A stretch of DNA of 64,000 nt from Laetmonice hystrix. Lineage: Eukaryota. Where the stretch lies: positions 41,602,001-41,666,000 of the forward strand of contig OZ249436.1 of the NCBI GenBank assembly GCA_965235115.1, written 5' to 3'. The position numbers and the translations under genes are program-made. Numbering within the stretch: the stretch's first letter is position 1; each line of letters starts with the position of its first letter. The notes below the pieces were generated by a model. That model did no database searches and was not told where the DNA came from. It worked only from the letters and a program-made list of their open reading frames with translations. Of the stretch, positions 210 through 59,674 are shown one piece after another.

Positions 210-3200
210 GACACATCAATGCGGGCCACTTGTAAGCAGTGTGAGAAAGGCTATCAATGTCCATTGTCAGCAATGACTGCCGGAGACCCATGTATAAATG
301 GAACACATGCTTCAAGTAAACAACAAATATCATGCACATTATGTCCTGCAGGTATGTCTTTTGTATTTTGGAAAAAGATAATACTGGCATAATACTTGGT
401 AAGTGTGGGTAAAAATAATGAGAACAGTAATCAACAAGGAGATATGTGAGAAACTAGACAGAAAACAAGTTTAAGATTCAAGACATTACGCGATAAGATA
501 ACATAAAACTAGTTTAAAAACTTGATAATATACCGTATTAACCTGTGTATAATTAGGTTGACATTTTAAACAGGTAAAAAGTGCCCTGATGTAACGTCGG
601 CTCCCATCAACTGTGTCTCTGGTGAGTATAGTCCAGAGGGTGTAGCGATATGCCTGCCATGTAACGACGGTGAATACTCAACATCCCCAAATGGTACCTG
701 CACAGTTTGTCCAGCGGGCAGTTACTGTGCTGACAAGACAGTGAACCCAGTGGCATGTGGCCCAGGAGAAGTGAGGTGAGTTACAGACGTACTTGTGTTA
801 CCTAGTGACAGAATGGCAGGGCGAGGAGAAAGCCAGAGGTTCTGGAAACCTTCTTACGATTCTCGGTTAGGAAAAAGAAAGTTATCGTTTAGAAATGTTC
901 CTTTGAGAAACAGTTTTGAATTTTTCATTGCAGTTTGGGTGGAGCCAAGGTGTGCACAGGGTGTGCCTTGGGGACATACAAGGAGGGTTCAGGAAATGGC
1001 ACCTGTGACTCTTGCCCAGCTGGGTACGAGTGCCCAACTACTAGTGCCAGTAGGTTCTTTTTCATCACTACACAGTCCTTTGAGCGGATTTCTCTTAAAG
1101 CTAAACTCGTTTGAATTCGGTTTCCGCGTCGGACTGCAGCGATGGCCCAGTCGCTCGCTCTGGTGTGGTCTGTGCTTGCTCGGGGAGCAGAGCGTTCAAT
1201 TTTTGGAACGGGTGCGTGGCGATTGGGCCATCGCTGCGGTCCGACGCGGAAACCGAATTCAATAGAGTTTACCTATCAAGTCTAGTTACCTATCTTTAAA
1301 GTCTAGTTCAACAAAATCATTTAATGATTGTTGAACTTTTATTTCAGAGTCGCCTTGTACAGATGGGTATTTCTCACTGGGTGGTGTTGCGGCCTGCATT
1401 CCTTGCCCCGGAGGTTATCAGTGCTCCGATAAGTCTTCATCTCCTGTGGAGTGTGCTGCAGGAACTTATGCAGCAAACACCAGTAATACCTGTACACCAT
1501 GTGCTCCGGGTTACTACTGTCCCACCAGTGGAATGTCGGAACCGTTAACGTGCCCTGCTGGCAGCGTCCAAACCTCAAATAATGGCCAGTCGTGTACAGA
1601 GTGCCAGCCAGGTCAGTGAGCGAGTTCTGTAAAGTATTGGATTGTCAGCATCACTATTGCAGAGGCTTCTTGCTTTGAATATTGTTATCTGTCCTATTAT
1701 CGTGCATTTAGTGACAAAATCTTGGTAATGTTGAGATACAGTTGAACCTGGATGATCGGACCATGTTGATTTTCTTAAATAAAGTGCCAGATCTTCAACA
1801 TGTCGGACTGTTCAATCTAGGTCAGGTGGGCAAGATGGGGGGTGGGGGGGGGTGAGCTTTAGTTGGGGTGACTAAAGTTGTACCCGAACAGTATAATAAG
1901 TCATCAGGTAAGACAAGGTTTAGGTACGTTGGCTTAGGAAGTCAGTGATACAGAATTTGTGGGTCTTGTTTGCCATGGTTTCATTGACTGGCATTATGAA
2001 ACAGGACAGGATCTGGGATGAATGGGCAGCATTTTGTTTGATAAAAAAATAATAGATAATTGTGGATGTGACATAGGGTACAAATGTGAGAACCGGTCAG
2101 TGGCTGCCGTGGCGTGTCCTGCAGGAACATATCAGAAATTTGGAGGGATGGAATCGTGTATAACAGTAAGTAAAGTGTTGGTCTTCATACTTTGATGACA
2201 ACAAAAGTGTTGTATGTATGTCCTGTTGACATTTGTTTTCTGTGTTGATATTGGGATCAAGCAGTTCAACATTATCAATCCATTGGTGATGATGAATTTC
2301 TGGTTTGCATGAGTGATACTCGGGGATGACTCCCGTATTCTCTATGAATTAGGGAAGGATTTTTAGCCTGTTTCAGATGACTTGAAGCAGCCATTCTGAG
2401 AAACCATGTTAGAAGTCAGACTTGTGAAAATGAAAGAAAAGATGCTAACAAATTGTGATCATATATTGTCTTTTATGTAGTGTCCGAGTGGTTACTACAC
2501 AACCAGTCCGGGAGAGTCGTCCTGTTCAGAGTGTCCTGCAAACAGCAAGTGTCCCCACCCTGCATCTCTGCCAGTCCCCTGCAGTCAGGGAGAGGTTTGT
2601 GTAGATTTGAGCTCCAAATCAGAACCAAATTGTGAGGACAGAAACTAATTTATCTCTACTTGTTTAATCTTTTTCAATTTAGAAAAAAACGGGTCTGTAA
2701 ATCTAATGCGATATTCGTAAACTTGAAAGGTGATGAAGCCTAAATGTGACTGTTTCAGTTTTCTGAGGCTGGGTCAGTTATCTGTACAACGTGTCCCGCA
2801 GGCAAGATTTGCACCAGCTCAGGGTCACCAACAACCTGCAATGTGAGTACAGGTTTCTTTAGTAGATAACGATACTTCATGATTTGGAAAAAGGAATTTG
2901 TTATCGAATATTTTGTTTTCAGGTATGCCTTTCCTACATATAAAATTGATGTGTATCATACATGTGTCTGCTTCCAGAGTGGGGAGTATTCGAATGGGAC
3001 AGCCTGTTTGCCCTGCCCACGTGGATTCAAGTGCCCGTCTCCTGACCAGCCACCACAGACGTGTCCCGATGGCTACTTCCAACCAAATGAAGGTCAAACT
3101 ACGTGTGATGCATGTCCTGCTGGAAAAAGTTGCTTGGACAAAGCTGGGGCAGCGGTTGACTGTGTGGCAGGGTGGTACAGTAGTTTGGGCGAAATGATCT

Positions 3201-6200: not shown

Positions 6201-6640
6201 CCAAGCAGGTTGAGTGCACGGTCTGCCCAACAGGAAATGAATGCCCGTCCACAACGGCCGCTACAATGACTGAGTGTACACCCGGTTCGTACAGCGCAGG
6301 GGGACAGGCTTCGTGCACGACATGTGGAGCGGGCTATGCTTGCCCAACAAAATATGCTGAAGTCCGAATGGCATGCCCGGCTGGGACCTACTCTGAAGCA
6401 GGCGCCACCATGTGCACAGATTGTGAAGTGGGTAAGGAATGTCCTCTCACCAACCAGACAGGGGTGGCATGCCCCTCTGGACACTACAGCCTGGGACGGC
6501 AGACAGTCTGTAGGCCTTGCCCAGTGGGATTCTCCTGTTCCGATCCAACCCAAGAACCAACACCCTGTGCTGAGGGCTTATACACCAACATGACTGGCCA
6601 GGCTTCTTGTCTGCCCTGTGACAAAGGTTACGTCTGCAAG
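210..6640 (+). CDS. Ectodomain block 1: tandem ~32-34-aa four-cysteine units (CxxGxYSxxGxxxCxxCPxGxxCP)
   Basis: Examples: CPPGTYSIGNATFCTDCPPGSACPNTNTDDLVT / CLPGTYALAKQVECTVCPTGNECPSTTAATMTE / CTPGSYSAGGQASCTTCGAGYACPTKYAEVRMA. Exons 1-15; exon 15 (6010-7649) is covered by the 559-aa ORF. Confidence 0.85.
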
Positions 6641-48600: not shown

Positions 48601-51600
48601 GATGCATCCAGGTATGTCCCTTCTTACCCTGCTGGTCATATTCATATTGATGTCTGGATGCTTTGTCTGAAAGGAAAGAGTTGCACAATCTCATAACACC
48701 AGAGCTGTGATTTTTAAGATATTGTATTAATGTATAGTGTTCTGACATTTTCAGAGAGGTGATTGTGACGGTCATGGCAGCGGGATCGTCCTGTGCCGCT
48801 GACAAACATCGTATCCTGCCGTCCTCACCCAACAATATCGTTACATCTGGAGTAAAGAAAAGTAAAGAGGTGAACGAGGCTCCAGACTGGGGTCTTATCG
48901 TCGGTAAGTGAACGCCACCTATAGGTGGTAGTGAGCACTGATATTAATGAGGATAGTTACATAGATTTCAGAAGGGGGTGGGAAGGGGCTAGTTTTTCTC
49001 AAGCTAAATGAGTTTTACTTCACATGGCTTGCATTATGAGTCAGAGTTGAGATACATGTACTGCTAGACTCATATATTTCTGTGATTTTGCGAGTGAGTT
49101 TCACAATCATTGATGCATCAAAAAGTCATCAAAATGCTCATGACGTCTAAATAGGTTCATCAGGACAGAAGATGGGCAGATAGCATGGGAAATACTTGAC
49201 CATGGTCTCCACAGTAGGTTCCCACTGGTCACTGATATAGGTGTGTTTCTATGACCTTTGTTCTGACTGACAGGTATGCTGGCGTCCCTGGCAGCCTGTG
49301 TCGTCATGCTGGTGGTGGCTGTCATTGTATGGAGACCACGGGATGCGGGTATTTACCCCATGAAACATTGGAAACCCAAGTACCGGAGTCTGGGGGCACC
49401 CCCGCCGGTACCCAGCTACATGCTACATGACGAGGATCACTGGCCCACCAAGTGAGTCATGGATCAGTCATTGATTAGTCACGGTCAAGGTTAAATAATA
49501 TAGAAGTAATATAGAAAAGAGCGAAAGAGTAAAACTAAAACCCCATGTAGTACTGGTTTTGTGGTGTGTTCTAGGGATGGAGAAGGTCTTGGGCCGAGAC
49601 TGTTGGGTGATGGTGCAGAGTCTGAGACTGGAATACTGGCAGTGAATGCAGAGGGTAACCTGGAAGATTTCAACGTGCGCGTACTGTTTGATAAACTGGA
49701 GGACCAGAACCTCCATCTGGCCTCGCAGCTGGCTCGCCATAACGAAGACCTCCAGGTGAGTTTGTGGGTGATAACCAAATGTTGAATTCCGAAAGGATCT
49801 TTATTATTGTACTGTGATAAATGATTGCGTTACTCATCATGACTGTACCTAATACATGTAGTCAGTTTACGATGACATCTTAATTCACAGGCCTTCTATG
49901 ATCGCATCAACGGCCAAAACGACGAGCTCAAGAAGATGCTGAATGATCTTGACCTTTCGAAGCTCGAGGAGATCGAGCGGCAACGGCATGAGGGAGGTGC
50001 CGGTCACGAGCAGGGTCATGTAGAGGGCGCTGCAGGTGGTGATGGCGTCAACATCGTTAACACAACAGTTAACATTGGCAGTGACGTCAATAGACAGTTT
50101 AAGTTCACAGGTGTGACACTTCCTTCGTTCGGCATCAATGTCGTACATCTTTTCTATCGGTTGAGTTCCGTTACCGAGTTTTAAATGTTGTGGCAGTAGA
50201 AACTTGTTTACCTTGGACTTATTTTGTGGGAATGGATGGTGATATATTTCAGTTCAGCAACAATAATCAATCTGGCTGTCATAGCTGGTTACTTTAATGC
50301 AGGAGCTTATCTTGACTTGACTGTGTTCTTTTAATCGTGGCAGGAGGAAATGGTCGTGAGGCAGAACTGATGCTAGCAGTTCAACAGTTGCTTGACAAAC
50401 TGAACTCTGGTCACATCCCAATATCTCCAGACATGCTCAGTGGTGACATGAAGAACATGTCGAGACCTGCCGAAGGCATACGTGTAGGTAACATTAGTTT
50501 GTCTAGGCAGCAGGAAAAGCCAGATGGGTAGAATATCAGCAAGTGAGAAATATGAATCAATGAGTTTTTTGTTCAAGGTAGAACCCCGTCGGAAGTTCAG
50601 TACGTGTACATAGAAAAATGTGTCCGACATGCCGTTTATAATTGTATCTATGCACCCCTAACCTTCAGATACAAGGCAAGGGCCTGGGGCGGAACCAGAA
50701 TTCAGAGCGACTTGCAACAGAACGAGAACTCGCAGCAGGCGAAAGAAATGCTTTAGATTCCCTATTGGCAGAAGATGAACTAAAACGAAACGAAATTATC
50801 CAGGATATGAGTGACAAACTAGCTGCAAAACTCCAGGGTGAGTGAGATGGTGAAAAAAGTAGCAAGTAACAAGTACGACCTGAATAATTGATCAAGGAGA
50901 TTTTCATGTAAATGTTTAACAGACCAAATGAAATAGAAAACACATGCAAGAGGAGCTTAGACCTCTGAAGATGTGTCTCTTGCAGGTGACCTTAGTGCAG
51001 AAGAGGTAGCCAGGATCATGGATGCCCACAGCAAGGATCTTCAGGAAGCCTTGGAACGTCATGACAAAGGTCGCAGCCGTCAAGCCGAAGCCCTGAGACA
51101 GAAACTGGCCGAGAGGCGGCGTAAGAAAGAGCAGGAACTTCTTGACAAGCACACAGAGGAGGTAAAGACTCCTTTTGGTTTATTTTTTATGAAAGGATTA
51201 AAATTCACATTCAGAATCAGCTAAAGTTTTCCCGTTAAAAGAAACAAGGGTTACCATTTCATTCAAGCGTCATGCTTTCAAAAACACTTCAAACTTGTTT
51301 TGTGAAACACAGGCCAAGAAGAAAGGACTTCCACCACCACCTGTCCCAGTTGACAACTCTGATGATCGAGTTGAGTCTGAGGAACACCTTCTCAAGTTAA
51401 TCCGCAGTCAAGAGAATGCGGGAGCAATCAAAGCTGATACGGACACTTCTCGCAAGATGGCAGAGGAAGAGATCAATCAGATCTCTGATCAACTCAAAGA
51501 ACAAATAGTAAGGATAATGACATTCTGTAGTAGTAGAATATTATGAACGAATTCTGCAAGTTTTGTTATATATTTTTGACCACCTTCATTTGCTATTTAA

Positions 51601-54600
51601 ACATGCTTGTTTGAGCACCAAGATTTTATTGTATTTTAGGAGAGTCTGCACCAGCAAGGCCTTCTGTCTGAGGAGGAGAGAGATCGTCTCATTAAGGAAC
51701 AGATGGACAGGCAGGTGGAGCTTGAGCAGGCCATGGAAGCTCGTCGCAATGCACAGTTGGCCTCATTCAAACAGCGCATGGCTGACAGAAAGAAGCGGCG
51801 CATAGACACGCTGAATCGGCAGCACGAACAAGACAAGATGGAGGTTTGTAAAAGATCTCTTTTCTATACGAAATGTGTAAAAAGCTGGATGAACGAATAT
51901 TTCATTTTGGATGAATCCTAGCATCAATTGGTAGAAAACGATGACGAGAACGGCTTTCTGTTCTGACAGCTGTCTACGAAGCTCCTACAGGAAGGTCACC
52001 ACGAGGACCTTGACCGAGTCATCGGTGACCTTGAGAGGAAACAGAAGCGGCAGGTTGAGGCAGTGGAGGCTGAGTTGGATGGTGAAGAGGCAGGTCACGT
52101 GAGGAGCATCACACAGGCTGTCGATGAGGAACACGTCAAGGATGTCAAGGAGGCTCACAAGGACATTATCAGCAAGGTCAGGGTTTTCACAATCAGGACT
52201 AGAACAGTAGGGGATTAATTTATAAAATGTGGAAGATATCATCGACATTATAGATACAATGTACAAATATATGGCAGAATTATGATTTGAAAGACATACT
52301 AAGAAAGATTATCCAGACACACTAGAGGAAGTGTTAACAGACCGATGATTTTACTGACAAAAACGTGGGCACTAACTTTTTCATCTCTCACAGATGTCGG
52401 AGGTTAACTCCGGAATTGATGGAGTTCTGCAACAGCGAATCATGGACCAGTATCGTCGTGACTGTGAGGCTGTCAATGAACAACTTGAATCAAGTCGCTT
52501 GAGACAGTTCAACGACCTGCATGTGAGTTAGACATGTTTATAATCGTGGGTCGCTCAAGGTATTGTATCCAACATCCAACATCTGAATATACCAGTACTG
52601 ATGAATGGTTTACATATACTGATGCAACTACTGTTAGTAATCTTTGGTACTCTGTGGCATCCACAGGCCAAGTTGTCAGCCCGTAAGGCTCGCCGGCTTG
52701 CTGACAGCCAGCGGCAATCTGAGGAAGAGGCAGCAGCACGCTTCCTTGCAGAACAAGAACAACAGATGAAGACGGTCATCGCTCAGAAAGACATCGGTGA
52801 TGATCTCTTCAAGGCACCACTGGTCACATACGGCGAGTCGGTAGAGGAGCAGGCCCTTAAAAAAGAACAGGTATATGGAAATTTTACTGGGGGTTGTCAT
52901 AAAGCAGTGCATCTTTCACATGGCAGGAAAAAAAAACAATATAAAGTAACATCTAAGTTGTCGCAGCAATGTAAATAATAACTAATTGGTTTTCCAGGAG
53001 CGTGCTAAGGAAGAGATCCGTAAGCGTCACAAGGTGGAGCACAAGTCTGTGGCCCAGAAGTTGGAAAGTGATGCCCATAAGGAAGAGGAGGTGCTGATTG
53101 CCAGCTCAGACCAGCAGAGAGAGCAGGCTCTGAGGGAGAAGAAAAATAAACAGGCGGCAGAGCTTGCAGCTCGCAAAGATCTCAGCCAAGAGGAGCTTGC
53201 AGCAGTGAGTCAATTGGAGTAGTTTACGTTAGAGAAGGTTGTACTAGATATGCAAACATGCACCTCATTCTGAAAATGTTAGAACTTATTGTGTCGATCA
53301 ACTAGAAATATGTGCTAATGATGTCGGCATTTTCTAAAAGGATGCCAGAGGCTGACTGTAATATGTACCCCGGTAATGGCCAACATTGTGGATTTGATCG
53401 TCTGTTTAAACCAATGATTGATTTTGTTTGCAGCTAATGGCTGCCCATGAACATGAGCTTCAATTGATGGCTGAAAAGATGGATGCTGACCGACAGCGAC
53501 AAATGGTGACACTCCGTGATAGAATGGCGCAGCGTCGCCGCCGTCGCATGGAAGCTTTGCGACGCAAGCAGGACGTTGAGTTAACTAAGGAGAGTCTGAC
53601 TCAGAAGAAGGAACTGGATGAAATCAAAACTGTTAAGGTGAGTGTGGTCACTACTGCAGAGGTCAATCACATTTTGGAATGCCGTCTGTGCAGTATTAAT
53701 GAGGTTAACGGATTTTCATCCACAGGCACGGGAGGTGGAGCAGCAGGCCATGGAGGAAGGAGTGAAGGAGAATGGTCTGGAGGAGAGTGACAAGGTCATC
53801 AGGGCTGTACAGGCTGAGCGACATGCCCAGGAGCTGAGGGACCTTGACAAACAGTTTACGGCCGAGAAGAAGATTGTGGTGGATGATGCTCTCAGTCAGT
53901 TGGCAGAGCGTTATGAAAGTCTTCATAACGATGCTGTCAAACGCCACGAGGCCGAACTGATAGCGCTACAGGTCAGAGAGGTTTTTTCTGTAGACTGTGA
54001 TCGTTCTTAATTTTTTTTGGTCAAATGGAACTTTTTTTTGGCTCCCGAAGGACTAGGAACAGAGAATTTTTATGGGAACTTGTAAAAAAATAGCAAACCT
54101 TATGTGGTGGATACTCCTTTTTGCTAGCCATCAAAATGAAATAAATAATATGCAGTCGATGATCGTTCTTACATCCCACCAACTTATGTAGATGGCTTAT
54201 GTAGATGACTTTTCTACAACCTTAATTGACCTTTCAGAAGAAGAACTTACCAGATGACGAGTACCAGCTGCGTCGATCTCAGCTCCTCAATAAGCAGCAG
54301 CTAGAGCTCGCTGAGCTTGACCAGCGACACAGCACAGAACAGAAGGAGATAGAACGCGGTGCCCTCACTGACTGGGAGATGCGCTATGCCCAGGCTAAAC
54401 TGAACCTCAAGGAAAAACACTACAAGGTCAGTTTTTCTCTTCTTTCACTTCGATTGTTCAGTTCCTGCCTTCAAACATTAAAACTGTTGATGATCAGCAG
54501 TCAATACATCAACATTTATTCAAGGGGACTTGTTTCGAGGTTGTTAGAATTTTGTAGCAGTTTCCCCCTTTTCTTCAGCTCAATACCTTTATTTCTTTGA

Positions 54601-57600
54601 CATTCAGGAGTTTGCCGAGGCCCTGCGAGGGTTCAACCCCCAGCACCAGAGCGTGGCACAGGCAGAGACAGCAGCCATAGAGTTAGAAGGAGTCCGAAAC
54701 AAGCTCGACCAACAGCGCAAGGAACACGTTGAACTTATCCAGAAGGAACAACAGTGTAAGTATTTGACACAAGAATAAATACATTACAATATAAATATTC
54801 ATATGTCCAAACAAGGTTTCAGTGGCTAGATTTTGAAAATTTGTTCTTCCAGCTTTTTACCAGTATTAGAAAATGGAGACGCTGTCAGACATGTTCACAG
54901 TCTTAAAAAGTGATACATGAATCATCTCTGCATTCTGTAAACTGTTTTTTATTTTCATTTTCAGCATTTGAGTCGGAGGAGGCTCGTCGTGCTCAGGCAG
55001 AGATTGAGGCATATAACCTCTCGCTGGAGAAGGAGACTGAGCGAGAACAGGAGCGCCATGCACGCAACATTGAAGCTCTCAACCAGCGCAAGGAGCAGCT
55101 GGTGCAAGACAAGAAAGACAAACTCAAGGTAGGATTCTCACTTTAATATGGTTACAGTTAGTTAGAGATCATCAGGTGGACGACAACGCTTCTGACAGTA
55201 CAAGAGGAACTATAAGTAAGAGGGCTTTGACAACCTTATAAAATACAACTTTGAAATTTTCATTGAATCATGGATTCCCCAGGCAAGACTTAAATCACTT
55301 TCCTCAAACTGCCTTATGAATTGGTTATTTTGGTGCTGAAATCTTTGTCACCTTGTCCCATACCGCGTGGTAAAGTTAGTGAGTTTGTGGCCAGGTGGAG
55401 CTGCAGAAAATGCAGCAGGCAGGGTCCTCCAAGGAAGAACAGGACCAGATCATGGCTGCCCACCAGCGTGACCTCCAAAACCTTGTCAACAAGATGGACG
55501 CCGACAAACTGCGCATGCAGAGCTCTCTCCAGGAGCGGCTGCGCAGACGGCGCCAGGAGAAACTCAAACAAAAGGAGGACTCGTTGAGTAAGGTCACGGA
55601 GGAGGGCAAGAGAGAGCTGGCTGAGAAACAACGCAGTGAGACAGATCGACTCATGGCTAACCAGGTAGGGTGACAAATTCAGGCAGCAGGTTGATGCAAG
55701 ATCTTTTTTCCACCCAATGAACACATTGATCACTGTTGAAGAAGGCTTAATTGAAGCTATAAGGATCATTAATATTTAGCATAATTTTGTACAATTCAAC
55801 CATTGCTTTCAGCAGTCGCCACCCATTTCCTGTTGCAGAAGTTGTTGCATTATTGAACCAAACTAAAGTGGCGTTTCCATGTGTACGTTTCCATAATTTG
55901 TTTCCATTATCTGTTTCCGTTTCATGGTTCCATTTTGAGGAATCGTCCACTGGGCTCATTTCCATGTCAGCTTCCGTTTCTCCTCAAACAGTGATAATTT
56001 CCCATTAGCATACCGTTTCCAGCATATGTTTAAGCAAATTCTATGGCATTTATAAGCCTATGTTTTGTAGCTTTTTGTCTCGTATCCAAATTTAAATAAA
56101 AGTATTAAAACATCAAGGTGCATCTTTACCGATGCTGTTGGTCTCTCAGTCTCACAAGGATAATGAGAATATTTACTTTCTGATGGTCTAATTATTGGCC
56201 GGTTTGGCGTAAGTCTGTTCCGGTCATGTCCCCACCTCCCTGACAGCATTCATGAGGCCAGTTCATAATAAAATTAACATCACAAGGCCTCTTGCACATC
56301 AAATGTGTTCCCTTTTCACCTAGCGGACATCTGTGGTACTACATTTTGCTCTCCGGGTTGCCATCCGTCTTCGTTTTGATCACTCCCCATTAAGATCGAG
56401 AAACAGAAAACGGAAAGTGAAAACGGAGTCGGACTGCGAAACGTACACATAGAAATGCGCCCGAGCCATGGGAAATAGGCATAAATGATCAAATTGGAAA
56501 CAGATAACAGAAATGGATAATGGAAACGGATAACGGAAATATGCACACGGAAAGGCCACTTAATTTACTTAATTTACTGTGTCAGGTACTGGCGTTAAGA
56601 GAGAGCATCAACATTGACCACATGGTGGCTCCACCGGTTCCGCCAAAAGTAACGCCACAGGTCGCAGAGCAAAGCTCGGCAGTTCCTGGCTCAGCCACTA
56701 CTGCGCCACCTGGTGGGACTGGCCAGGAAGGAGCCATGCCGACGTCATACCAGATGGCAGCACCACTCAATGATGCCGAGTTAACGGCGTTACTGATGGC
56801 GTCTCCACTGTACCAGAAACTGGAAAAAATCAAGAAGTCTGTGAGTGGAGCTGGCAAGTTGAGGCGCAAGGCTGCCCCGGGTAAGAACAGCTCAGAGATC
56901 ATAGTCGGATTACATAAAAATGTTTCTATCAGACAATAACATAGAGAGGAACTCCTGGTGAAACGACTATCCAGAATTAAGCACATGATATATGATTGAT
57001 GTTAGTATTAGTTTATCTGTGATTTATAATGTGATGTAGTGTTAGTTCTCTGTGATCTCAATACGCCTAAAATTAATCCATGAATTATTTTCACTTTTGA
57101 CTTTCTACCTCAACCTGTAATATAAAACATGGTGTACATATGTTGGATGATGTCATCACAGGACCCCGCTTTCATGACGGCTCCCAGCCGAGTAGGTAAT
57201 CCTGTATAAAGATGCTCAATAAAAAATTAAAAAAAAGAAGATGTGTTTAGGAGGAAAGCATAGGATAGCATCTGTATTGTTATGAAACAGGTCAGCTATA
57301 CTATAACAGGGTGAGTAAAAAAAAACGATACACTCACCCTTTTTTGACTCACCCTGTAGTATATCTAAACCGTCACTCATTTCATAAAAGGAAGAATTAG
57401 GGGACCCATAATGGTGTTTCAAGAAATAAAGCAAACCACACTGAAAGCCTGTTCTTGTTTCCTTGTACTATACAGGGGATAGTTACATAGACCTACAAGA
57501 TGCAGAATGGACCATTGATGACGAACTGGAACCAGTGGATTTGAACAAGTTACCTGGACGCACATTTGTCGTTTACAAGTTTGGCTGTTTCGTTGTGGAC

Positions 57601-59674
57601 CTTCTTGCTGCACACTGCCAGCATAAACCAGTCACATTGCTCCTTGCGGAAAAGATTCCAGCCAATAAGCAGCTCTCTAACAATGCTTATCGTAACTCGT
57701 TTTACTATGACGCAAACAATTCTATTCTGTACCTGCGTGTTGCTCGACTGGACTGTGTGGGTCAGTTTGTACTGGTTCTTGTGCACACATTGGCCCACAT
57801 CAAGGCTGGTAAGTGAACACAAAATGTTCACCCATTTTAAACCATTTAAGCCAAGAATCTTGGATTACTCTCAATCAGTGAAGTTTGATGTAGGTTTGAA
57901 ATCTTGGATTACTCTCTATCAGTGAAGTCTGATGTAGGTTTGAAAGAAATTGTAACTAAGTCAATGAGTCGATCATTACATGAATCCAATCAAACAATAT
58001 AACATTCTGTCCCAACTCAATAGGTGATCTCGAAGACGACCACAGCCCTGAGTTTGCACTACAGTTCTACCGTGCCCTATCAGTCGTTTGTGACGATCTG
58101 TTCTTCGCCCGCTACCGCCAAGAGTCGTCCCCAGCTGAGACTCTGTCCAAATCGTCTGGAGTTGATGTGAAGGAGGCAGCCTCTGGCCTGCTGGCCGCCA
58201 TGTTTGGCAACACGTACAATGAGGAGGAAAGGTCGCAGGTGGTGGATGACCTCCTGGAGACGCGCATTCTTCCCGGCACAGATGGGAACGGTGTCTCCTT
58301 TAGCAAAGACAAGATAAAAGAGAGGTACATTGTCTATCATATGACATTATGTTAGAATTTGAAAGAATTTATTTTTTCTGTTTTTATATTTTAAGTTCTC
58401 ATTTACTTTGATTAGTTTAAACATGGATGTAAACGTGTGTTCTAGGTTGGACAAGTACACACGTTATTCGGTGAGTCACAAGCTACAGAACTGTCTTGGT
58501 GATGTGGAGGAGAAAATCAGGGTGGCCAAGGGAACAGGATCAAAGATGTTGGCCTCACAACGACTCAAAGAGTTGCTGCCGGAATCAACTCTAGGTATGA
58601 GCCAACTCGATTCTTATCGTATATCTAAATTCTAAAGAGCCTGGTCCATTAAGGCGATTTTCATTGTGACGTCCATGCGATTTTGACATCACTGTTTTAT
58701 TTTTACTTTTTGGATTAAAGAACCCATTTCCTGAAACGGGGAAGGCCAGCCAGGAAAGATTTCAGATTGAAATTCCACCATTAAATCAAAAATCGCATTT
58801 CTTGAGAGTTGAACTATTCCTAGATTAAACCCACTGTGGGTCTGTGGTACTAGGAGACATGAGAGTTTTCTGCAGATCTAGGCTACATATTTCAAAGGAT
58901 TTCCAACAGAAGTATCAATCATGGTATTGGTTATTTTCCTACAGGTAGCTCACTGGCGACTCAGCCTGCTCAGGTTCTTCCGGAAAGCCGCATTCTAGCT
59001 AACATGACTGGTCATGCTCTCTGGCAAACATTCACTAACCAAGAATCTGGGACAAAAGCTGATACGGATTCGGCCAAGACACCAAGAAAGCGAGGACCAC
59101 CTCATGAGGAACTGCTAAAGGTGAGTGTGTTCTTCTCCAACGTCCATGTTTCAAAAGCAAATATTTTCTGAAGATCTTGAATGGTAGTGCGTCGGACTAC
59201 CTCAATTAATTATGCAGGAGTTTCTTTTATGAAACATCGTAAAAAAACATGTCACTGATACTCAAATTCCTCTATCTTCTTTTCCAGTCAAAGGTCGAGG
59301 ATCTTGAAAATCGCCTGGACGAACTTTACGCTGACTTCTCAGAACAGAGCCGGAGTATCATAGATGTCACCGAACAGATTGATGGTACAGCAGAAGAGGT
59401 TGCCATGGAAACAGAGCTCGCCAACAATACGCCAGGTGTGGAAGCTGGGAAACACGTGACCAGCCTGAAGGAATCGACGGCACGTCTCAGAGAGCTCCGG
59501 TCAAAACTAGCCAGACTGGAGTGTCAGAAATCTACGACCTCAGACAAATTAGAGAAGTGCCAACAAGAACTGGAGACTACACGACAACAGAAATATGAAG
59601 TGTTGGAAGAGGGGGTTCGCCAACCTAAAGAAAAGGTCACCCCCACTAAATCTGTTAAAGGAAAGAAGAAGTGA
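210..59674 (+). CDS. Giant multi-exon gene (5' end outside window): >=9,592-aa type I membrane protein with Cys-rich ephrin-receptor-like (GCC2/GCC3) repeats, single TM helix and long coiled-coil cytoplasmic tail
   Basis: Exons traced by AG/GT (one GC) boundaries that keep the Cys-repeat frame: 210-351,574-775,934-1049,1348-1611,2077-2165,2481-2594,2759-2842,2978-3205,3469-3631,3929-4047,4330-4515,4736-4980,5170-5390,5772-5892,6010-7649,7799-7940,8195-9918,10380-10571,10966-11100,11484-11750,11995-12351,12626-12805,13233-13349,13689-13841,14118-14270,14440-14655,14938-16113,16286-16540,16804-17037,17240-17427,17670-17836,18079-18323,18516-19451,19693-20983,21251-21864,22054-22395,22650-23171,23570-23690,23827-24041,24223-24456,24882-25133,26130-26264,26546-26869,27114-27281,27410-27520,27716-27901,28110-28325,28522-28803,29082-29288,29429-29695,29986-30273,30414-30683,30872-31081,31605-31904,32120-32275,32393-32575,32911-33072,33290-33499,34243-34422,34598-34870,36267-36401,36658-36882,37133-37429,37691-37813,37953-38118,38309-38484,38727-38918,39036-39257,40727-40980,41190-41410,41795-42015,42331-42474,42621-42788,42961-43287,43469-43577,43757-44031,44238-44393,44674-45685,45912-46062,46491-46629,47718-47917,48457-48611,48755-48903,49274-49451,49575-49755,49891-50110,50344-50483,50669-50837,50986-51161,51313-51507,51640-51843,51970-52176,52394-52522,52667-52870,52998-53204,53434-53637,53726-53971,54238-54426,54608-54755,54965-55128,55395-55664,56586-56880,57476-57808,58024-58324,58446-58594,58945-59120,59288-59674 (TGA). 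Sum 28,779 nt = 9,593 codons including the stop, starting in phase 0. A possible extra 51-nt exon at 46842-46892 is not counted. Confidence 0.9.
1099..1274. mobile_element. MITE-like foldback element with ~55-bp inverted arms (intron 3)
   Basis: taaactcgtttgaattcggtttccgcgtcggactgcagcgatggcccagtcgc ... gcgattgggccatcgctgcggtccgacgcggaaaccgaattcaatagagttta. Left flank is TTAA|AG; a CT|TTAA lies ~20 bp past the right arm, so the TSD is ambiguous. Confidence 0.75.
6010..7649 (+). CDS. Large internal exon 15 of the giant gene (Cys-rich repeats)
   Basis: Acceptor tttttcag|c at 6008-6009, donor gaag|gtaaaa at 7650; matches ORF 6074..7753. Confidence 0.92.
8195..9918 (+). CDS. Large internal exon 17 of the giant gene (Cys-rich repeats)
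   Basis: Acceptor ttctag|t, donor acag|gtgaga; matches ORF 8133..9968. Confidence 0.92.
11124..11307. mobile_element. Tc1/mariner (pogo/Tigger-like) MITE
   Basis: TA|CAGTCAGACCTCGCTTATCCGGA ... TAATGAGGTCTGACTC|TA; TA TSD on both sides. Confidence 0.75.
12626..40980 (+). CDS. Ectodomain block 2: ~700-aa super-repeat region of GCC2/GCC3-like Cys repeats (6 full periods, 7 marker copies)
   Basis: Three independent rare sub-motifs recur every ~2.1 kb of spliced CDS (see findings). N-x-S/T sequons are abundant (NQTG, NYTG, NVTG, NSTG). Confidence 0.85.
12928..13079. mobile_element. Palindromic MITE with CAG target-site duplication (PIF/Harbinger-like)
   Basis: ~70-bp inverted arms (gagccggttttactaaag...agtgaatgg / ccattcact...ctttagtaaaaccggccc) around a ~10-nt loop; CAG at 12925-12927 and 13080-13082. 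Confidence 0.8.
14938..16113 (+). CDS. Large internal exon 27 of the giant gene
   Basis: Acceptor gttacag|ct, donor actg|gtgcgt; matches ORF 15009..16184. Confidence 0.9.
18516..19451 (+). CDS. Large internal exon 33 of the giant gene
   Basis: Acceptor cttcag|gt, donor acag|gtacgt; matches ORF 18476..19459. Confidence 0.9.
19693..20983 (+). CDS. Large internal exon 34 of the giant gene
   Basis: Acceptor cccacag|ga, donor aatgg|gttggt; matches ORF 19644..21056. Confidence 0.9.
23261..23431. mobile_element. MITE with CAG TSD (PIF/Harbinger-like)
   Basis: CAG|GGGTGCGTTCCAC ... GTGGAACACACCC|CAG; repeated aaagacgtcttt subterminal motifs. Confidence 0.8.
23440..23479 (+). repeat. 40-nt copy (39/40 identical) of the intron41/exon42 junction at 26117-26156
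   Basis: gtgttccctgtaggtgactgcagtgctagcttctactgct vs gtgttccctgtaggtgactgcagtgctggcttctactgct. Confidence 0.9.
25182..25859. mobile_element. Non-autonomous Tc2-like (TcMar) DNA transposon
   Basis: TA|CCGTAATCTTCCGTGTACAAGCCGC left end; GCAGCTTATACACGGAAGAGTAC right end (last bases diverged); internal direct repeat ggccatgtataagccgcaccc near both ends. Confidence 0.7.
31162..31336. mobile_element. MITE with CAGTGGCGTACCCAGA TIR (hAT-like ends) and 5-bp GTAAC duplication
   Basis: GTAAC|CAGTGGCGTACCCAGA ... TCTGGGTACACCACTG|GTAAC. Confidence 0.8.
33727..34262 (+). repeat. 62-63-bp minisatellite, 8 copies plus the real intron58/exon59 junction
   Basis: Unit tattctgtgcccaggataatgtctgccatgtacactttctgggtcagata(a/g)tttgtcact(t)tg. 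AG ends at 33740, 33802, 33865, 33927, 33990, 34053, 34116, 34179; the functional AG ends at 34242. Confidence 0.97.
39350..39660. repeat. Possible interspersed repeat fragment in intron 68
   Basis: Contains atgaaatttggcaca and gcagccatttt motifs typical of invertebrate non-autonomous elements; no TIR or TSD resolved. Confidence 0.3.
40981..41189 (+). other. Non-canonical GC-AG intron
   Basis: Exon 69 ends CAT ATG|GCAAGT and exon 70 starts in phase 0 (GTT GAC CTA). The nearby GT alternatives are phase 1 and break the frame. Confidence 0.75.
44674..45685 (+). CDS. Exon 78: last Cys repeats, then a distinct Cys-rich linker (CECIGKYRAFQTSDGACRCLSGY...)
   Basis: Acceptor ctccag|gt, donor gaag|gtatag; matches ORF 44652..45845. 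Confidence 0.9.
46842..46892 (+). CDS. Candidate 51-nt symmetric (phase 1-1) extra exon, VEDATFAIVNGKSHSLP
   Basis: Acceptor gtgtcttgcag, open frame in phase with exon 80, donor ccag|gtacca (weak). Confidence 0.5.
47979..48350. mobile_element. CMC/EnSpm-like non-autonomous element with 2-bp CT TSD and duplicated right half
   Basis: CT|CCCAGATAGCACACAG ... CTGTGTGCTATCTGGA|CT; internal ~50-bp inverted arms; a second right end (TGTGTGCTATCTTG) finishes at 48191. Confidence 0.75.
48888..49332 (+). CDS. Single transmembrane helix (split over exons 83/84): WGLIVGMLASLAACVVMLVVAVIVW
   Basis: 25 uncharged, mostly hydrophobic residues followed directly by basic RPRDAGIYPMKHWKPKYR (positive-inside rule). 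Confidence 0.85.
49575..55664 (+). CDS. Cytoplasmic coiled-coil region (exons 85-101), E/K/R/Q-rich with repeated MxAHxxxL...MDAD...LxxRxxxRRR modules
   Basis: [27 protein letters not shown], then charged helical exons; ten consecutive phase-0 introns. Confidence 0.85.
55867..56560. mobile_element. Non-autonomous DNA transposon with TAA TSD (PIF/Harbinger-like) and TTTCC/GGAAA subterminal arrays
   Basis: TAA|AGTGGCGTTTCCATGTG ... CACACGGAAAGGCCACT|TAA; tttcc(a/g)t repeats at the left end and (c/t)ggaaa repeats at the right end. Confidence 0.75.
57307..57356. mobile_element. Tiny internally deleted Tc1/mariner remnant
   Basis: CAGGGTGAGTAAAAAA ... TTTTTGACTCACCCTG|TA; only the right TA is intact. 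Confidence 0.5.
57476..58324 (+). CDS. Cytoplasmic globular alpha/beta domain with zincin-like HTLAH...DHSPEF motif (exons 103-104)
   Basis: Translation ...NSFYYDANNSILYLRVARLDCVGQFVLVLVHTLAHIKAG|DLEDDHSPEFALQFY...; the exon calls are firm, the fold call is inference. Confidence 0.7.
57856..57943 (+). repeat. Two-copy 44-bp tandem duplication in intron 103
   Basis: aatcttggattactctc(a/t)atcagtgaagt(t/c)tgatgtaggtttga x2. Confidence 0.9.
59288..59674 (+). CDS. Terminal coding exon of the giant gene (coiled coil, ends ...KSVKGKKK*)
   Basis: Acceptor tttccag|tca; open to TGA at 59672-59674 (ORF 59249..59674). Confidence 0.9.
   Translation, partial: SKVEDLENRLDELYADFSEQSRSIIDVTEQIDGTAEEVAMETELANNTPGVEAGKHVTSLKESTARLRELRSKLARLECQKSTTSDKLEKCQQELETTRQQKYEVLEEGVRQPKEKVTPTKSVKGKKK

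What the first reader, a model, noticed from the sequence alone, without database searches (positions are those of the whole stretch)
210..59674. A ~1-MDa single-pass receptor-like protein: >=7,900-aa Cys-repeat stalk, RRLL site, TM helix, 1,670-aa coiled-coil and pseudo-zincin tail
Seen: 107 frame-consistent exons give >=9,592 aa, and the N-terminus is still outside the window. Domain order is Cys repeats, Cys linker, RRLL/Pro-rich hinge, beta-rich domain, TM, coiled coil, globular domain, coiled coil. Established: CxxCPxGxY repeats match the ephrin-receptor-like/GCC2-GCC3 family. From memory (unverified), giant uncharacterised proteins of this type occur in ciliated protists and animals, including vertebrate predicted genes. 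Inference: this is a very long, heavily N-glycosylated surface filament tied to an intracellular scaffold, such as a ciliary, sperm or glycocalyx tether or mechanosensor.
Basis: partly seen in the sequence, partly recalled or inferred. Interest (0 to 1): 0.85.

Follow-up and report, generated by a model that had tools for sequence, protein, structure and literature searches.

The report
Megadalton cleavable surface-filament membrane protein
The window holds almost all of one real gene of about 117 exons for a roughly 10,000-residue single-pass membrane protein. It belongs to an ancient, still unnamed eukaryotic family whose giant sugar-coated stalk appears built to be cut from, yet stay clipped to, its membrane anchor.

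Summary
My own splice model gives 108 frame-consistent + strand exons in the window (210-59674), 9,655 aa and no stops. Nine more exons lie within 5.7 kb upstream and add a signal peptide, for 117 exons, 10,075 aa and 1.06 MDa.

The domain order is conserved in independently predicted or transcript-derived proteins. These come from a crinoid (collinear across the membrane junction), a frog, Chromosphaera, Fabomonas and Percolomonas. It is therefore one gene of a very old family in which every member is annotated "uncharacterized".

- **Beta-rich domain.** It has a cupredoxin fold without copper ligands.
- **RRLL.** It is the optimal SKI-1/S1P convertase motif. It sits in a disordered loop inside that fold, and other members carry S1P-like or furin-like sites there (15 of 26, against 1.25 in shuffles). 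No cysteine is placed to bridge the cut. Cleavage would therefore leave an ~854-kDa stalk held non-covalently to a ~208-kDa anchor, as in Notch S1 or mucin SEA.
- **Cytosolic tail.** The "coiled coil" is a highly charged helical region with no detectable heptads. The tail domain is zincin-like, with H-x-x-x-H...D conserved and the catalytic Glu absent.

No function has been tested. A ciliary role is only hinted at, and no RNA data exist for this organism.

The parts
210..45685 (+). 79 exons, mostly phase 1-1, that encode the Cys-repeat stalk. The repeating unit is CxxCxxGxYC...CPxG(T)Y. With the upstream exons the ectodomain has about 8,360 aa, 888 Cys and 184 N-glycosylation sequons.
   Evidence: Splice model. 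Cys content per exon. PF07699 Ephrin_rec_like at 27.9, 24.0 and 35.2 bits against a cut-off of 23.1. Repeat anatomy. Sequon enrichment.
45912..46629 (+). Two exons (45912-46062 and 46488-46629). They encode the last Cys knot and the strands that precede the loop in the membrane-proximal module.
   Evidence: Family alignment. AF2 model mcaadb05c69c6 shows strands 37-93 before the loop.
47718..47917 (+). Exon that carries the disordered multibasic loop and the first strands of the cupredoxin-like core after the loop. The sequence reads ...TQTGRRRLL|ATTVSPPPPP...
   Evidence: Translation. Collinear with Anneissia residues 2210-2263. Loop pLDDT below 50.
47756..47770 (+). Codons for R-R-R-L-L, a predicted SKI-1/S1P-type convertase site (RRLL then Ala).
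   Evidence: RRLL is described as the optimal S1P motif in PMC8310232. A motif of S1P or furin type occurs in the same loop in 15 of 26 members, against 1.25 +/- 1.0 in shuffles.
48457..48903 (+). Two exons (48457-48611 and 48755-48903) for the rest of the cupredoxin-like juxtamembrane domain. Conserved motifs are HYPxY.KD.L.NTNP.FDYG.F, G.YV..D and PDW.
   Evidence: Alignments. Fold search: pseudoazurin Z 7.1, rmsd 2.7 A over 97 residues. Plastocyanin and amicyanin, probability 0.94-0.99.
49274..49451 (+). Exon with the single TM helix (...GLIVG|MLASLAACVVMLVVAVIVW), followed by the conserved cytosolic motif RPRDAGIYPMKHWKPKYRSL.
   Evidence: Hydropathy scan and the homologous TM position in 16 relatives. 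Alignment.
49575..55664 (+). 18 exons, nine of them phase 0-0 (eight of 189-246 nt, one of 129 nt). They encode about 1,100 aa of E/K/R/Q-rich helical region, 40-54% EKRQ over most of its length. It is coiled coil or single-alpha-helix-like.
   Evidence: Translation. Collinear with Anneissia 2363-3388. Composition, heptad and charge-pair tests. No Pfam match.
56586..56880 (+). Exon for a Pro-rich linker and a conserved helix (SPLYQKLEKIKK) that leads into the tail domain.
57476..58324 (+). Two exons (57476-57808 and 58024-58324) for the conserved zincin-like tail domain. HTLAH lies at 57784-57798 and the conserved Asp at 58038-58040.
   Evidence: 366 homologues, 21 of them below 1e-30. Near-invariant H, H and D with A/C/T/S in place of Glu. 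AF2 core pLDDT above 90. Foldseek to minigluzincins, MPN_634 and HtpX/OMA1.
58446..59674 (+). Three terminal exons (58446-58594, 58945-59120, 59288-59674), ending at the stop codon 59672-59674. They encode a helical tail that ends in an antiparallel helical hairpin.
   Evidence: AF2 helices 427-481 and 487-544. Generic helical-hairpin matches.

Best explanation
This is one protein-coding gene of about 117 exons. Nine of them lie just upstream of the window. It encodes a type I membrane glycoprotein of about 10,075 aa (1.06 MDa before sugars).

Shown:
- The exon chain is stop-free.
- The candidate N-terminus looks like a signal peptide.
- The ectodomain holds about 8,000 aa of disulfide-rich Ephrin_rec_like repeats, with sequons selectively enriched.
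- The membrane-proximal domain has a cupredoxin fold and lacks copper ligands.
- That fold carries a disordered loop with the optimal S1P motif RRLL.
- There is one TM helix.
- The cytosolic part has about 1,100 aa of highly charged helical region, a zincin-like domain with H-x-x-x-H...D and no catalytic Glu, and a helical hairpin.
- The same order of parts occurs in relatives from Discoba, Ancyromonadida, Ichthyosporea and animals.

Inferred mechanism:
- In the Golgi a subtilisin-type convertase cuts the loop. The motif points to S1P here, and to furin in lineages that carry RxxR.
- The first two strands of the cupredoxin sandwich stay with the stalk, and the other strands stay with the anchor. 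No cysteine is positioned to bridge the cut.
- The ~854-kDa glycosylated stalk would therefore remain clipped non-covalently to the ~208-kDa transmembrane subunit.
- The protein would act as a surface filament some hundreds of nanometres long. Its attachment could be released or sensed under tension. Its charged helical tail and catalytically inert zincin-like domain would dock to an intracellular partner, probably cytoskeletal.
For: **Gene model.**

**Single-gene architecture.**
- Anneissia XP_033122761.1 aligns collinearly from the last repeat exons through the loop, cupredoxin, TM, charged-helix and tail-domain exons (window 44231-58340).
- The full-length Fabomonas Trinity ORF (7,499 aa) and the Chromosphaera models (7,076 and 6,410 aa) show signal peptide, 10-12% Cys, one TM, an EKRQ-rich region and the tail domain. 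A Percolomonas transcriptome ORF (4,727 aa, no signal peptide detected) has the same later parts.

**Topology.** Sequon enrichment is confined to the ectodomain.

**Cupredoxin fold.**. Asp occupies the position of the copper-ligand Cys.

**Cleavage site.**
- The loop has pLDDT below 50 in a model with pTM 0.81.
- RRLL is described as the optimal S1P motif (PMC8310232).
- S1P-like or furin-like motifs occur in 15 of 26 members against 1.25 +/- 1.0 in shuffles.
- Only two Cys follow the site, and none lies between model residue 31 and the site.
- The pseudoazurin alignment spans model residues 79-263, that is both sides of the loop.

**Tail domain.**
Against: - No RNA or protein data exist for this organism. 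Exon borders in the repeat region are ab initio.
- Cleavage is predicted, not shown. Eleven of 26 members lack a strict motif, among them the short-ectodomain vertebrate group.
- The disulfide pattern and the strand complementation are read from an AF2 model of the crinoid homologue and from alignment ranges, not from coordinates of this protein.
- The zincin-like assignment rests on weak Foldseek E-values (0.07-0.2 against the PDB, 2e-4 against MPN_634). The tail domain was never folded alone.
- Heptads were not detected, so a dimeric coiled-coil rod is unproven.
- Protist transcriptomes can be contaminated.
Confidence: 0.55

Rival explanations
1. Same single gene and architecture, but the protein is a constitutive structural component of the cell coat or of an adhesion site. 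The basic loop is not cleaved, or cleavage has no mechanical role. The stalk simply spaces or shields the membrane and binds matrix or partners along its length.
For: The stalk is huge, repetitive and heavily glycosylated. Stalk length varies from 0 to more than 8,000 aa among relatives, which suggests a spacer rather than a specific ligand site. Eleven of 26 members lack a strict convertase motif.
Against: Convertase-type motifs in the loop are far above the shuffle expectation. They switch between S1P and furin types across lineages, which suggests selection for being cut. A conserved cytosolic tail of more than 1,600 aa with two undescribed conserved modules suggests transmembrane coupling.
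Confidence: 0.2
2. Same gene, and the protein is specifically a ciliary or flagellar surface or sperm protein (a hair, a tether or a gliding adhesin).
For: All named holders are flagellated organisms or animals: Percolomonas, Fabomonas, Chromosphaera, echinoderm, hemichordate, fishes, amphibians and reptiles. si:ch211-286b4.4 is the gene name that NCBI gives to a Pristis homologue. That name appears among genes up-regulated in zebrafish testis relative to ovary (10.1101/650218).
Against: No localisation data exist and no ciliary targeting feature was identified. Most eukaryotes are flagellated, so the distribution has little discriminating power, and I could not run absence tests in non-ciliated lineages. 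The zebrafish link rests on an automatic gene name. The helical matches to axonemal proteins are generic.
Confidence: 0.2
3. The chain is an artefact. Either two or more adjacent genes (a secreted Cys-repeat protein and a separate TM and helical-tail protein) have been read as one, or the locus is an unexpressed pseudogene.
For: There is no RNA evidence for this organism. Short family members exist that start near the cupredoxin domain, so a separate downstream gene is conceivable. The Anneissia protein is itself a computational prediction.
Against: The chain has 117 phase-compatible exons and no stop in 30 kb of coding sequence. Transcript-derived ORFs from Fabomonas and Percolomonas carry repeats, TM and tail in one ORF. 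The exons after the stalk have no start codon or signal peptide of their own, and the stalk has no other anchor. Selection signatures are intact: sequons, Cys spacing and conserved motifs.
Confidence: 0.05

Closest known systems
Unnamed family annotated only as 'uncharacterized protein'. Examples: Anneissia japonica LOC117121631 (XP_033122761.1), Saccoglossus LOC100369241, Discoglossus KAM4652057.1, teleost 'si:dkey-103g5.4', elasmobranch 'si:ch211-286b4.4', and Chromosphaera, Fabomonas and Percolomonas ORFs.
   Same: True homologues. The tail domain is 42-74% identical. The juxtamembrane, TM and cytosolic motifs are conserved. The crinoid protein is collinear with the window's exons. The order of parts is the same.
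   Different: The window's stalk (about 8,360 aa) is the longest seen here. Protist and frog forms have 3,000-4,700 aa. Several vertebrate forms have little or no stalk and no convertase motif. No member has a described function, and the two conserved non-repeat domains have no Pfam model.
Notch S1 (furin) cleavage in the heterodimerisation domain, SEA domains of membrane mucins, and GAIN domains of adhesion GPCRs and polycystin-1 (from established knowledge).
   Same: A cut inside a folded membrane-proximal domain leaves a very large extracellular subunit bound non-covalently to a membrane subunit. This gives a force-sensitive or sheddable link. Here the site is a convertase motif in a loop within one beta-sandwich, with no bridging cysteine.
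   Different: The fold is different: cupredoxin-like rather than SEA, GAIN or Notch HD. There is no sequence relationship. Cleavage here is predicted and would be enzymatic (S1P or furin), not autoproteolytic. Works-like only, not membership.
Cupredoxins (plastocyanin, pseudoazurin, amicyanin) and the cupredoxin-like ephrin ectodomain.
   Same: Greek-key beta-sandwich. Pseudoazurin gives Z 7.1 and rmsd 2.7 A over 97 of 123 residues. Plastocyanin gives Z 5.8. The motif G-x-Y-V-F-x-D parallels G-x-Y-x-F-Y-C. Like ephrin-B, the domain sits next to a TM helix and has no copper site.
   Different: The Cys ligand position holds Asp, and no conserved His or Met follows it. Ephrin structures score lower (Z 3.5) than true cupredoxins. 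The fold carries a long disordered insertion.
Ephrin_rec_like / GCC2_GCC3 repeat proteins (PF07699), for example the Cys-rich regions of SCUBE, SVEP1 and ELAPOR, and protist Cys-rich surface proteins.
   Same: CxxCxxGxY-type disulfide repeats. PF07699 scores above threshold on several exons.
   Different: The scores are low for arrays of this size (24-35 bits), so the repeats are divergent. No characterised PF07699 protein that I know of has about 150 modules or this TM and tail architecture (from memory).
Zincin metallopeptidases of the minigluzincin/M48/M56 type (selecase, jannalysin, HtpX, OMA1, BlaR1) and the uncharacterised Mycoplasma MPN_634/635 proteins.
   Same: The predicted topology is helix, three-stranded sheet, then a helix carrying H-x-x-x-H, followed by a helix after a conserved Asp. 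Foldseek probability is 0.93-0.98 to minigluzincins and E is 1.9e-4 to MPN_634.
   Different: The residue after the first His is A, C, T or S, never Glu, so the general base is absent. No sequence-level match to any peptidase family was found. The domain is cytosolic and embedded in a structural tail.

Membership tests
Uncharacterised 'LOC117121631 / si:dkey-103g5.4-like' family | Conserved C-terminal domain (NAFRNSF...H-x-L-A-H-I...D..P.F) | tested here: met
   phmmer of exon 57478-57807 found 366 proteins at E<=1e-3 and 21 at E<=1e-30. Conserved columns.
Uncharacterised 'LOC117121631 / si:dkey-103g5.4-like' family | Conserved juxtamembrane domain, then a single TM, then the cytosolic W(K)PKYR.L motif, in the same protein as the tail domain | tested here: met
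   26 retrieved proteins carry both modules. The window's exons align throughout. Collinear tblastn with the crinoid protein.
Ephrin_rec_like (PF07699, formerly GCC2_GCC3) | Pfam HMM score above the gathering threshold (23.1 bits) | tested here: met
   27.9 bits (8133-9965) and 24.0 bits (44652-45842). 35.2 bits (45120-45683). Three other long ORFs score below the threshold and two have no match, so the repeats are divergent.
Cupredoxin superfamily | Greek-key beta-sandwich fold | tested here: met
   AF2 model of the crinoid homologue with family alignment A2: pLDDT 82.5, pTM 0.81. Nearly all top matches are cupredoxins: Z 7.1-4.5 and Foldseek probability 0.94-0.99. Atlas rows 4-7. Z values are below 8, so the support is moderate.
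Cupredoxin superfamily (blue copper proteins) | Type-1 copper ligands (His, Cys, His, Met) | tested here: not met
   Asp is conserved where the Cys ligand would sit (G.YVF.D), and no conserved His or Met follows it. None of the near-invariant residues is His or Met, and the one near-invariant Cys (C244) lies outside the ligand position.
Zincin metallopeptidases | HExxH with a catalytic Glu | tested here: not met
   H213 is conserved in 73 of 75 sequences and H217 in 72 of 75. Position 214 is mainly A (27), C (25), T (8), S (7) or I (4), and Glu is not among the five commonest residues. The window has HTLAH.
Zincin metallopeptidases | Zincin fold: mixed sheet followed by an active-site helix and a third metal ligand | tested here: inconclusive
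   The secondary-structure order fits, and the core has pLDDT above 90. Foldseek gives selecase, jannalysin and abylysin at probability 0.93-0.98 but E 0.07-0.2, MPN_634 at E 1.9e-4, and HtpX and OMA1 at E 0.01-0.07. Asp is conserved nine residues after the second His. The domain was not folded alone, and the VIA searches were swamped by the helical hairpin.
Substrates of SKI-1/S1P or furin-type proprotein convertases | Consensus motif (RRLL, or R-x-K/R-R) in an exposed lumenal segment | tested here: met
   RRRLL lies at 47756-47770. The loop has pLDDT below 50. RRLL is called the optimal S1P motif in PMC8310232. Motif enrichment across the family.
Substrates of SKI-1/S1P or furin-type proprotein convertases | Actual cleavage in cells | not testable with these tools
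   This needs immunoblots or N-terminomics, with and without convertase inhibition.
Coiled-coil proteins | Heptad (a/d) hydrophobic periodicity | tested here: inconclusive
   The 3.5-residue power and the best-register a/d contrast do not exceed shuffles over cytosolic residues 250-1100. Opposite charges at i/i+4 are enriched, 102 against 71 +/- 7. My tests were not calibrated on known coiled coils. The homodimer prediction gave no verdict.
SEA / GAIN / Notch-HD cleavage modules | Homologous fold or sequence | tested here: not met
   The fold matches are to cupredoxins, and none of these modules appears in the lists. There are no Pfam hits. The resemblance is functional only.

The most novel reading that the evidence does not exclude
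A family as old as the last eukaryotic common ancestor encodes convertase-cleaved, force-releasable megadalton surface filaments. On this reading it is a previously unrecognised class of eukaryotic mechano-adhesive receptor.

A split, copper-less cupredoxin domain would act as the mechanical fuse. A metal-binding but catalytically dead zincin domain would act as the intracellular adaptor.

A further speculative extension: this architecture joins an Ephrin_rec_like stalk to an ephrin-like cupredoxin and TM module in one chain. It could therefore be related to the pool from which Eph and ephrin parts were drawn. The 'ephrin-like' cupredoxin plus TM protein F2TW21 reported in Salpingoeca rosetta (PMC6993872) may belong to this family. 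I could not check that.
Probability: 0.2. Interest if true: 0.85.

Novelty: new variant of a known kind. Interest (0 to 1): 0.66.

Why it matters
- **Size.** At about 10,000 residues this would be among the largest animal proteins, and probably one of the largest single-pass membrane proteins.
- **Age and neglect.** The family reaches from Discoba and ancyromonads to vertebrates. It keeps a fixed order of parts, and no member has a name, a Pfam model for its two signature domains, or a paper in the library I searched.
- **Testable design.** The predicted convertase cut lies inside a folded domain with no bridging disulfide. That design resembles Notch, mucins and adhesion GPCRs, but it is built from a different fold.
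- **If confirmed.** It would add an independent and much older solution to the problem of coupling a long extracellular tether to the cell interior.
- **Reagents.** The analysis supplies the cleavage motif, the H/H/D triad and the conserved cytosolic juxtamembrane motif for experiments in sea urchin, zebrafish or Chromosphaera.

Tried and rejected
- **Earlier findings.** The search of earlier findings for this place returned nothing.
- **RNA evidence.** Two run searches found only three DNA-type runs from one study. I did not use read laying, because DNA contigs cannot show splicing.
- **Pfam.** Scans of the tail, juxtamembrane and charged-helix parts, on window exons and on homologues, found no family.
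- **Solved structures.** A profile search gave only coiled-coil noise.
- **Word-index protein searches.**
  - With alignment A1 I got 12 hits, all unnamed apart from one Lytechinus 'uncharacterized protein'.
  - With lungfish P0049 I got two elasmobranch relatives.
  - With Chromosphaera P0067 I got only the query itself.
  - So I could not tabulate taxa or find a named mammalian member. AlphaFold DB cluster hits with hidden organisms may include mammals, judging only by accession style.
- **VIA-align on the 545-residue tail model.** The terminal helical hairpin dominated the results, which say nothing about the zincin-like core.
- **Homodimer prediction.** The job on the crinoid charged-helix region (residues 2950-3350, two copies) scored 0.00. 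That is no verdict, and I do not use it as evidence either way.
- **Protein Atlas feature searches.** They gave only weak leads: viral hypotheticals, MPN635_N, SprT-like and YgjP-like.
- **Literature.** Searches for the fish gene names and for combinations of GCC2/GCC3, Ephrin_rec_like, giant, flagell* and cupredoxin found no description of the family.
- **My first splice models.** They contained spurious 6-30 nt exons and ran past the true stop. They also skipped the conserved exon 57476-57808. I curated the 3' third by homology instead.
- **Active metalloprotease tail.** I considered this and rejected it, because the Glu is absent across 75 sequences.
Full report
**What the window is.** The window is G000:C1:41602001-41666000 of a 627-Mb, 35-contig eukaryotic assembly. 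It has 37-53% G+C by 2-kb bin, contains no N, and has the intron-rich look of an animal genome. The closest named relatives of its protein are from a hemichordate and a crinoid. The species is not disclosed.

**Checking the observation.** I listed + strand open frames. I then wrote a dynamic-programming exon chainer with codon log-odds and splice PWMs trained on the window itself.

- I removed spurious micro-exons and curated the last third with homologue alignments.
- The resulting in-window model has 108 exons from 210 to 59674, 9,655 codons, no stop and GT-AG at every intron.
- Of the 117 exons in the full model, 75 start in phase 1. That is typical of shuffled extracellular modules.
- The TM helix begins at in-window residue 7,967 and 1,667 aa follow it.

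**The missing N-terminus.** I fetched 80 kb upstream.

- Cys-repeat exons continue for only about 5.2 kb.
- An ATG at window coordinate -5702 opens MTAGQSSCGRLILSTCLLWLSVGIG. It is followed by TAG|GTACGT in phase 1, which matches the phase-1 acceptor of the next exon.
- The full model then has 117 exons, 10,075 aa and 1,065 kDa.
- Further upstream there are transposon-like ORFs on the other strand.

**Is it one gene?** No RNA run exists for this organism, so the test is comparative. A phmmer search with the 110-aa exon 57478-57807 against 1.84 billion proteins gave 366 hits. In all the long hits the domain lies about 100-470 aa from the C-terminus. Named members are:

- Anneissia japonica XP_033122761.1, 3,985 aa.
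- Saccoglossus LOC100369241.
- Discoglossus KAM4652057.1, 4,605 aa.
- Chromosphaera perkinsii models of 7,076 and 6,410 aa.
- A Fabomonas tropica Trinity ORF of 7,499 aa.
- A Percolomonas cosmopolitus MMETSP ORF of 4,727 aa.
- Shorter vertebrate forms: teleost 'si:dkey-103g5.4', lungfish, turtles, lizards, Ascaphus, and elasmobranch 'si:ch211-286b4.4'.

The crinoid protein aligns collinearly to the window. The alignment runs from the last repeat exons (44231) through the loop exon, both cupredoxin exons, the TM exon, 11 charged-helix exons and the tail-domain exons, to 58340.

The full-length protist proteins show a signal peptide, 3,000-4,700 aa at 10-12% Cys, one TM, an EKRQ-rich region, the tail domain and a short tail; the Percolomonas ORF shows all but the signal peptide. 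Two of these come from transcriptomes. I therefore put a single gene at about 0.9-0.95.

**The stalk.**

- The ectodomain has 888 Cys at 10.5%.
- Its units of 52-78 aa are built from CxxCxxGxYC, CxxGxYC and CPxGTY sub-repeats.
- PF07699 (Ephrin_rec_like, formerly GCC2_GCC3) scores above threshold on three ORF or exon pieces, but only at 24-35 bits. The repeats are divergent members.
- N-x-S/T sequons number 184 against 58 +/- 7 expected from composition. In the cytosolic part they number 6 against 5.8. This independently supports the topology and heavy glycosylation.
- By analogy with EGF- and TNFR-like arrays (my knowledge), about 150 modules would span some hundreds of nanometres. This is inference.

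**The membrane-proximal module.** Aligning the 330 aa before the TM helix from 17 members showed strong conservation from protists to animals. The pattern is NPxxCL..G...F, HYPVY.KD.L.NTNP.FDYG.FR.L, F..PG.YVF.D, a Cys, PDW, the TM helix, then W(K)PKYR.L.

- An AF2 model of the crinoid segment with the 29-sequence family alignment reached pLDDT 82.5 and pTM 0.81.
- Foldseek and an exhaustive VIA-align search both return almost only cupredoxins. Pseudoazurin gives Z 7.1 and rmsd 2.7 A over 97 of 123 residues. Plastocyanin gives Z 5.8. Foldseek probabilities are 0.94-0.99.
- The copper site is gone. Asp is conserved where the Cys ligand would sit, and no conserved His or Met follows it.
- No Pfam model covers the module.

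**The RRLL site.** The only low-confidence stretch of that model (residues 111-134) is the loop that carries RRRLL.

- The pseudoazurin alignment spans model residues 79-263. Strands on both sides of the loop therefore belong to the same sandwich.
- A review of proprotein convertases calls RRLL the optimal SKI-1/S1P cleavage motif. It is identical to site C of the enzyme's own prodomain and to the Lassa GP-C site (PMC8310232).
- At the same loop other members carry:
  - RRLL (crinoid, Fabomonas).
  - RKLL (both Chromosphaera proteins).
  - RRII (Percolomonas).
  - RSIV.
  - Furin-type RNKR (lungfish), RVRR (turtle), RGRR and RSRR.
- Fifteen of 26 members have a strict S1P-like or furin-like motif in the last 45 loop residues. 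Composition-preserving shuffles give 1.25 +/- 1.0, with a maximum of 5 in 500.
- The short-stalk vertebrate group lacks the motif.
- After the site the ectodomain has exactly two Cys, both conserved. No Cys lies in the 99 residues before the site. A bridging disulfide is therefore unlikely.
- I infer that a Golgi convertase cuts the protein into an ~854-kDa stalk subunit and a ~208-kDa membrane subunit. The two would be held together only by strand complementation.
- This is the logic of Notch S1, mucin SEA and GAIN domains, reached with an unrelated fold. Cleavage itself is not shown.

**The cytosolic part.**

- Residues 250-1100 after the TM helix are 44% E/K/R/Q and 22% L/I/V/M/F, with almost no Pro or Gly.
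- Neither the 3.5-residue Fourier power nor the best-register a/d contrast exceeds shuffles.
- Opposite charges at i/i+4 are enriched, 102 against 71 +/- 7.
- No internal repeat reached BLAST significance. Nine consecutive phase 0-0 exons, eight of 189-246 nt and one of 129 nt, do hint at a modular origin.
- 'Coiled coil' is therefore unproven. A charged single-helix-like rod or a coiled coil both fit. A homodimer prediction gave no verdict.

**The tail domain.**

- A 75-sequence alignment shows near-invariant H213 and H217 (H-[AC]-L-[AS]-H-I) and D226, with no Glu after the first His.
- The window has HTLAH at 57784-57798 and the Asp at 58038-58040.
- The AF2 model has a core with pLDDT above 90. 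Its order is helix, three strands, the H-x-x-x-H helix, then another helix.
- Foldseek's best solved matches to that core are the minigluzincins selecase, jannalysin and abylysin, at probability 0.93-0.98 and E 0.07-0.2.
- Among Swiss-Prot models it finds Mycoplasma MPN_634 and MPN_635 (E 2e-4 to 3e-4), then OMA1, HtpX and MecR1.
- 'Pseudo-zincin' is thus a fair but only moderately supported label. Metal binding may persist, and peptidase activity probably does not.
- The protein ends in a generic antiparallel helical hairpin.

**Function.** Nothing here tests function.

- The named holders are all flagellated organisms or animals.
- The gene name that NCBI gives a Pristis homologue (si:ch211-286b4.4) is on a list of genes up-regulated in zebrafish testis relative to ovary (10.1101/650218).
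- One family fragment is fused to a MAP65/ASE1 microtubule-binding domain.
- These are hints, not evidence. I rate a specifically ciliary or sperm role at about 0.2.
- I commit to the cleaved, non-covalently tethered surface filament coupled to an intracellular scaffold as the most likely mechanism. I rate the gene and its architecture at about 0.9 and the cleavage-tether mechanism at about 0.45.

**Novelty.**

- The parts are known folds, and giant cleaved surface receptors are a known kind.
- This family, its split cupredoxin module and its tail domain are not described in Pfam or in any paper I could find.
- A paper on Eph/ephrin origins reports an 'ephrin-like' cupredoxin plus TM protein in Salpingoeca rosetta (PMC6993872). 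It might be a family member. I could not check this.
- I class the finding as a new variant of a known kind.

Noticed in passing
window 1095-1284: A short element of about 190 bp with internal inverted repeats (MITE-like) sits in an intron. The search reported 138 matches across the genome at 72-97% identity, on both strands. My second splice model wrongly took part of it (1140-1279) as an exon.
   Followed up: partly
window 33724-34262: A 63-bp tandem repeat of 8.6 copies at 96% match lies in an intron. Its 3' end overlaps the first 20 nt of my predicted exon 34243-34422, so that acceptor is uncertain.
   Followed up: no
L013 (G000:C29:14711450-14711767, + strand): The genome has one paralogue of the tail domain (42% identity, E 1.2e-23). 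The 51-aa juxtamembrane exon found no second copy, so the paralogue may be a divergent or short-stalk form.
   Followed up: no
L010, window coordinates -1431..-1291, -1076..-936 and -605..-465: Three consecutive 141-nt phase 1-1 exons encode nearly the same peptide (...GAGxSNCTxCPxGYNCNNPASITECLAGThSAEG...). This looks like recent tandem exon duplication that is still lengthening the stalk.
   Followed up: partly
L007-L008 (upstream 80-kb coordinates 44546-51216, - strand; G000:C1:41566546-41573216): A cluster of long minus-strand ORFs (358, 515, 373 and 809 aa) lies about 30 kb upstream of the gene. It looks like a large transposable element or another gene. I did not analyse it.
   Followed up: no
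protein P0139 (564 aa, unnamed source): One family fragment has the tail domain at about residues 91-205, followed by a MAP65_ASE1 microtubule-associated domain (PF03999, E 3.5e-21, residues 319-542). It is either a merged gene prediction or a real fusion that hints at a microtubule link.
   Followed up: partly
window 48042-48400 (intron between exons 47917 and 48457): Open frames here repeat similar peptides (PNGYQLVTP..., GGPTVGHRLC...). This suggests a duplicated low-copy element inside the intron. An early model wrongly used two pieces of it as exons.
   Followed up: no
literature: PMC6993872: Salpingoeca rosetta F2TW21 (PTSG_11572) is reported there as an 'ephrin-like' copper-less cupredoxin domain next to a TM helix. 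That is the same arrangement as this family's juxtamembrane module. I could not fetch the sequence to test membership.
   Followed up: no
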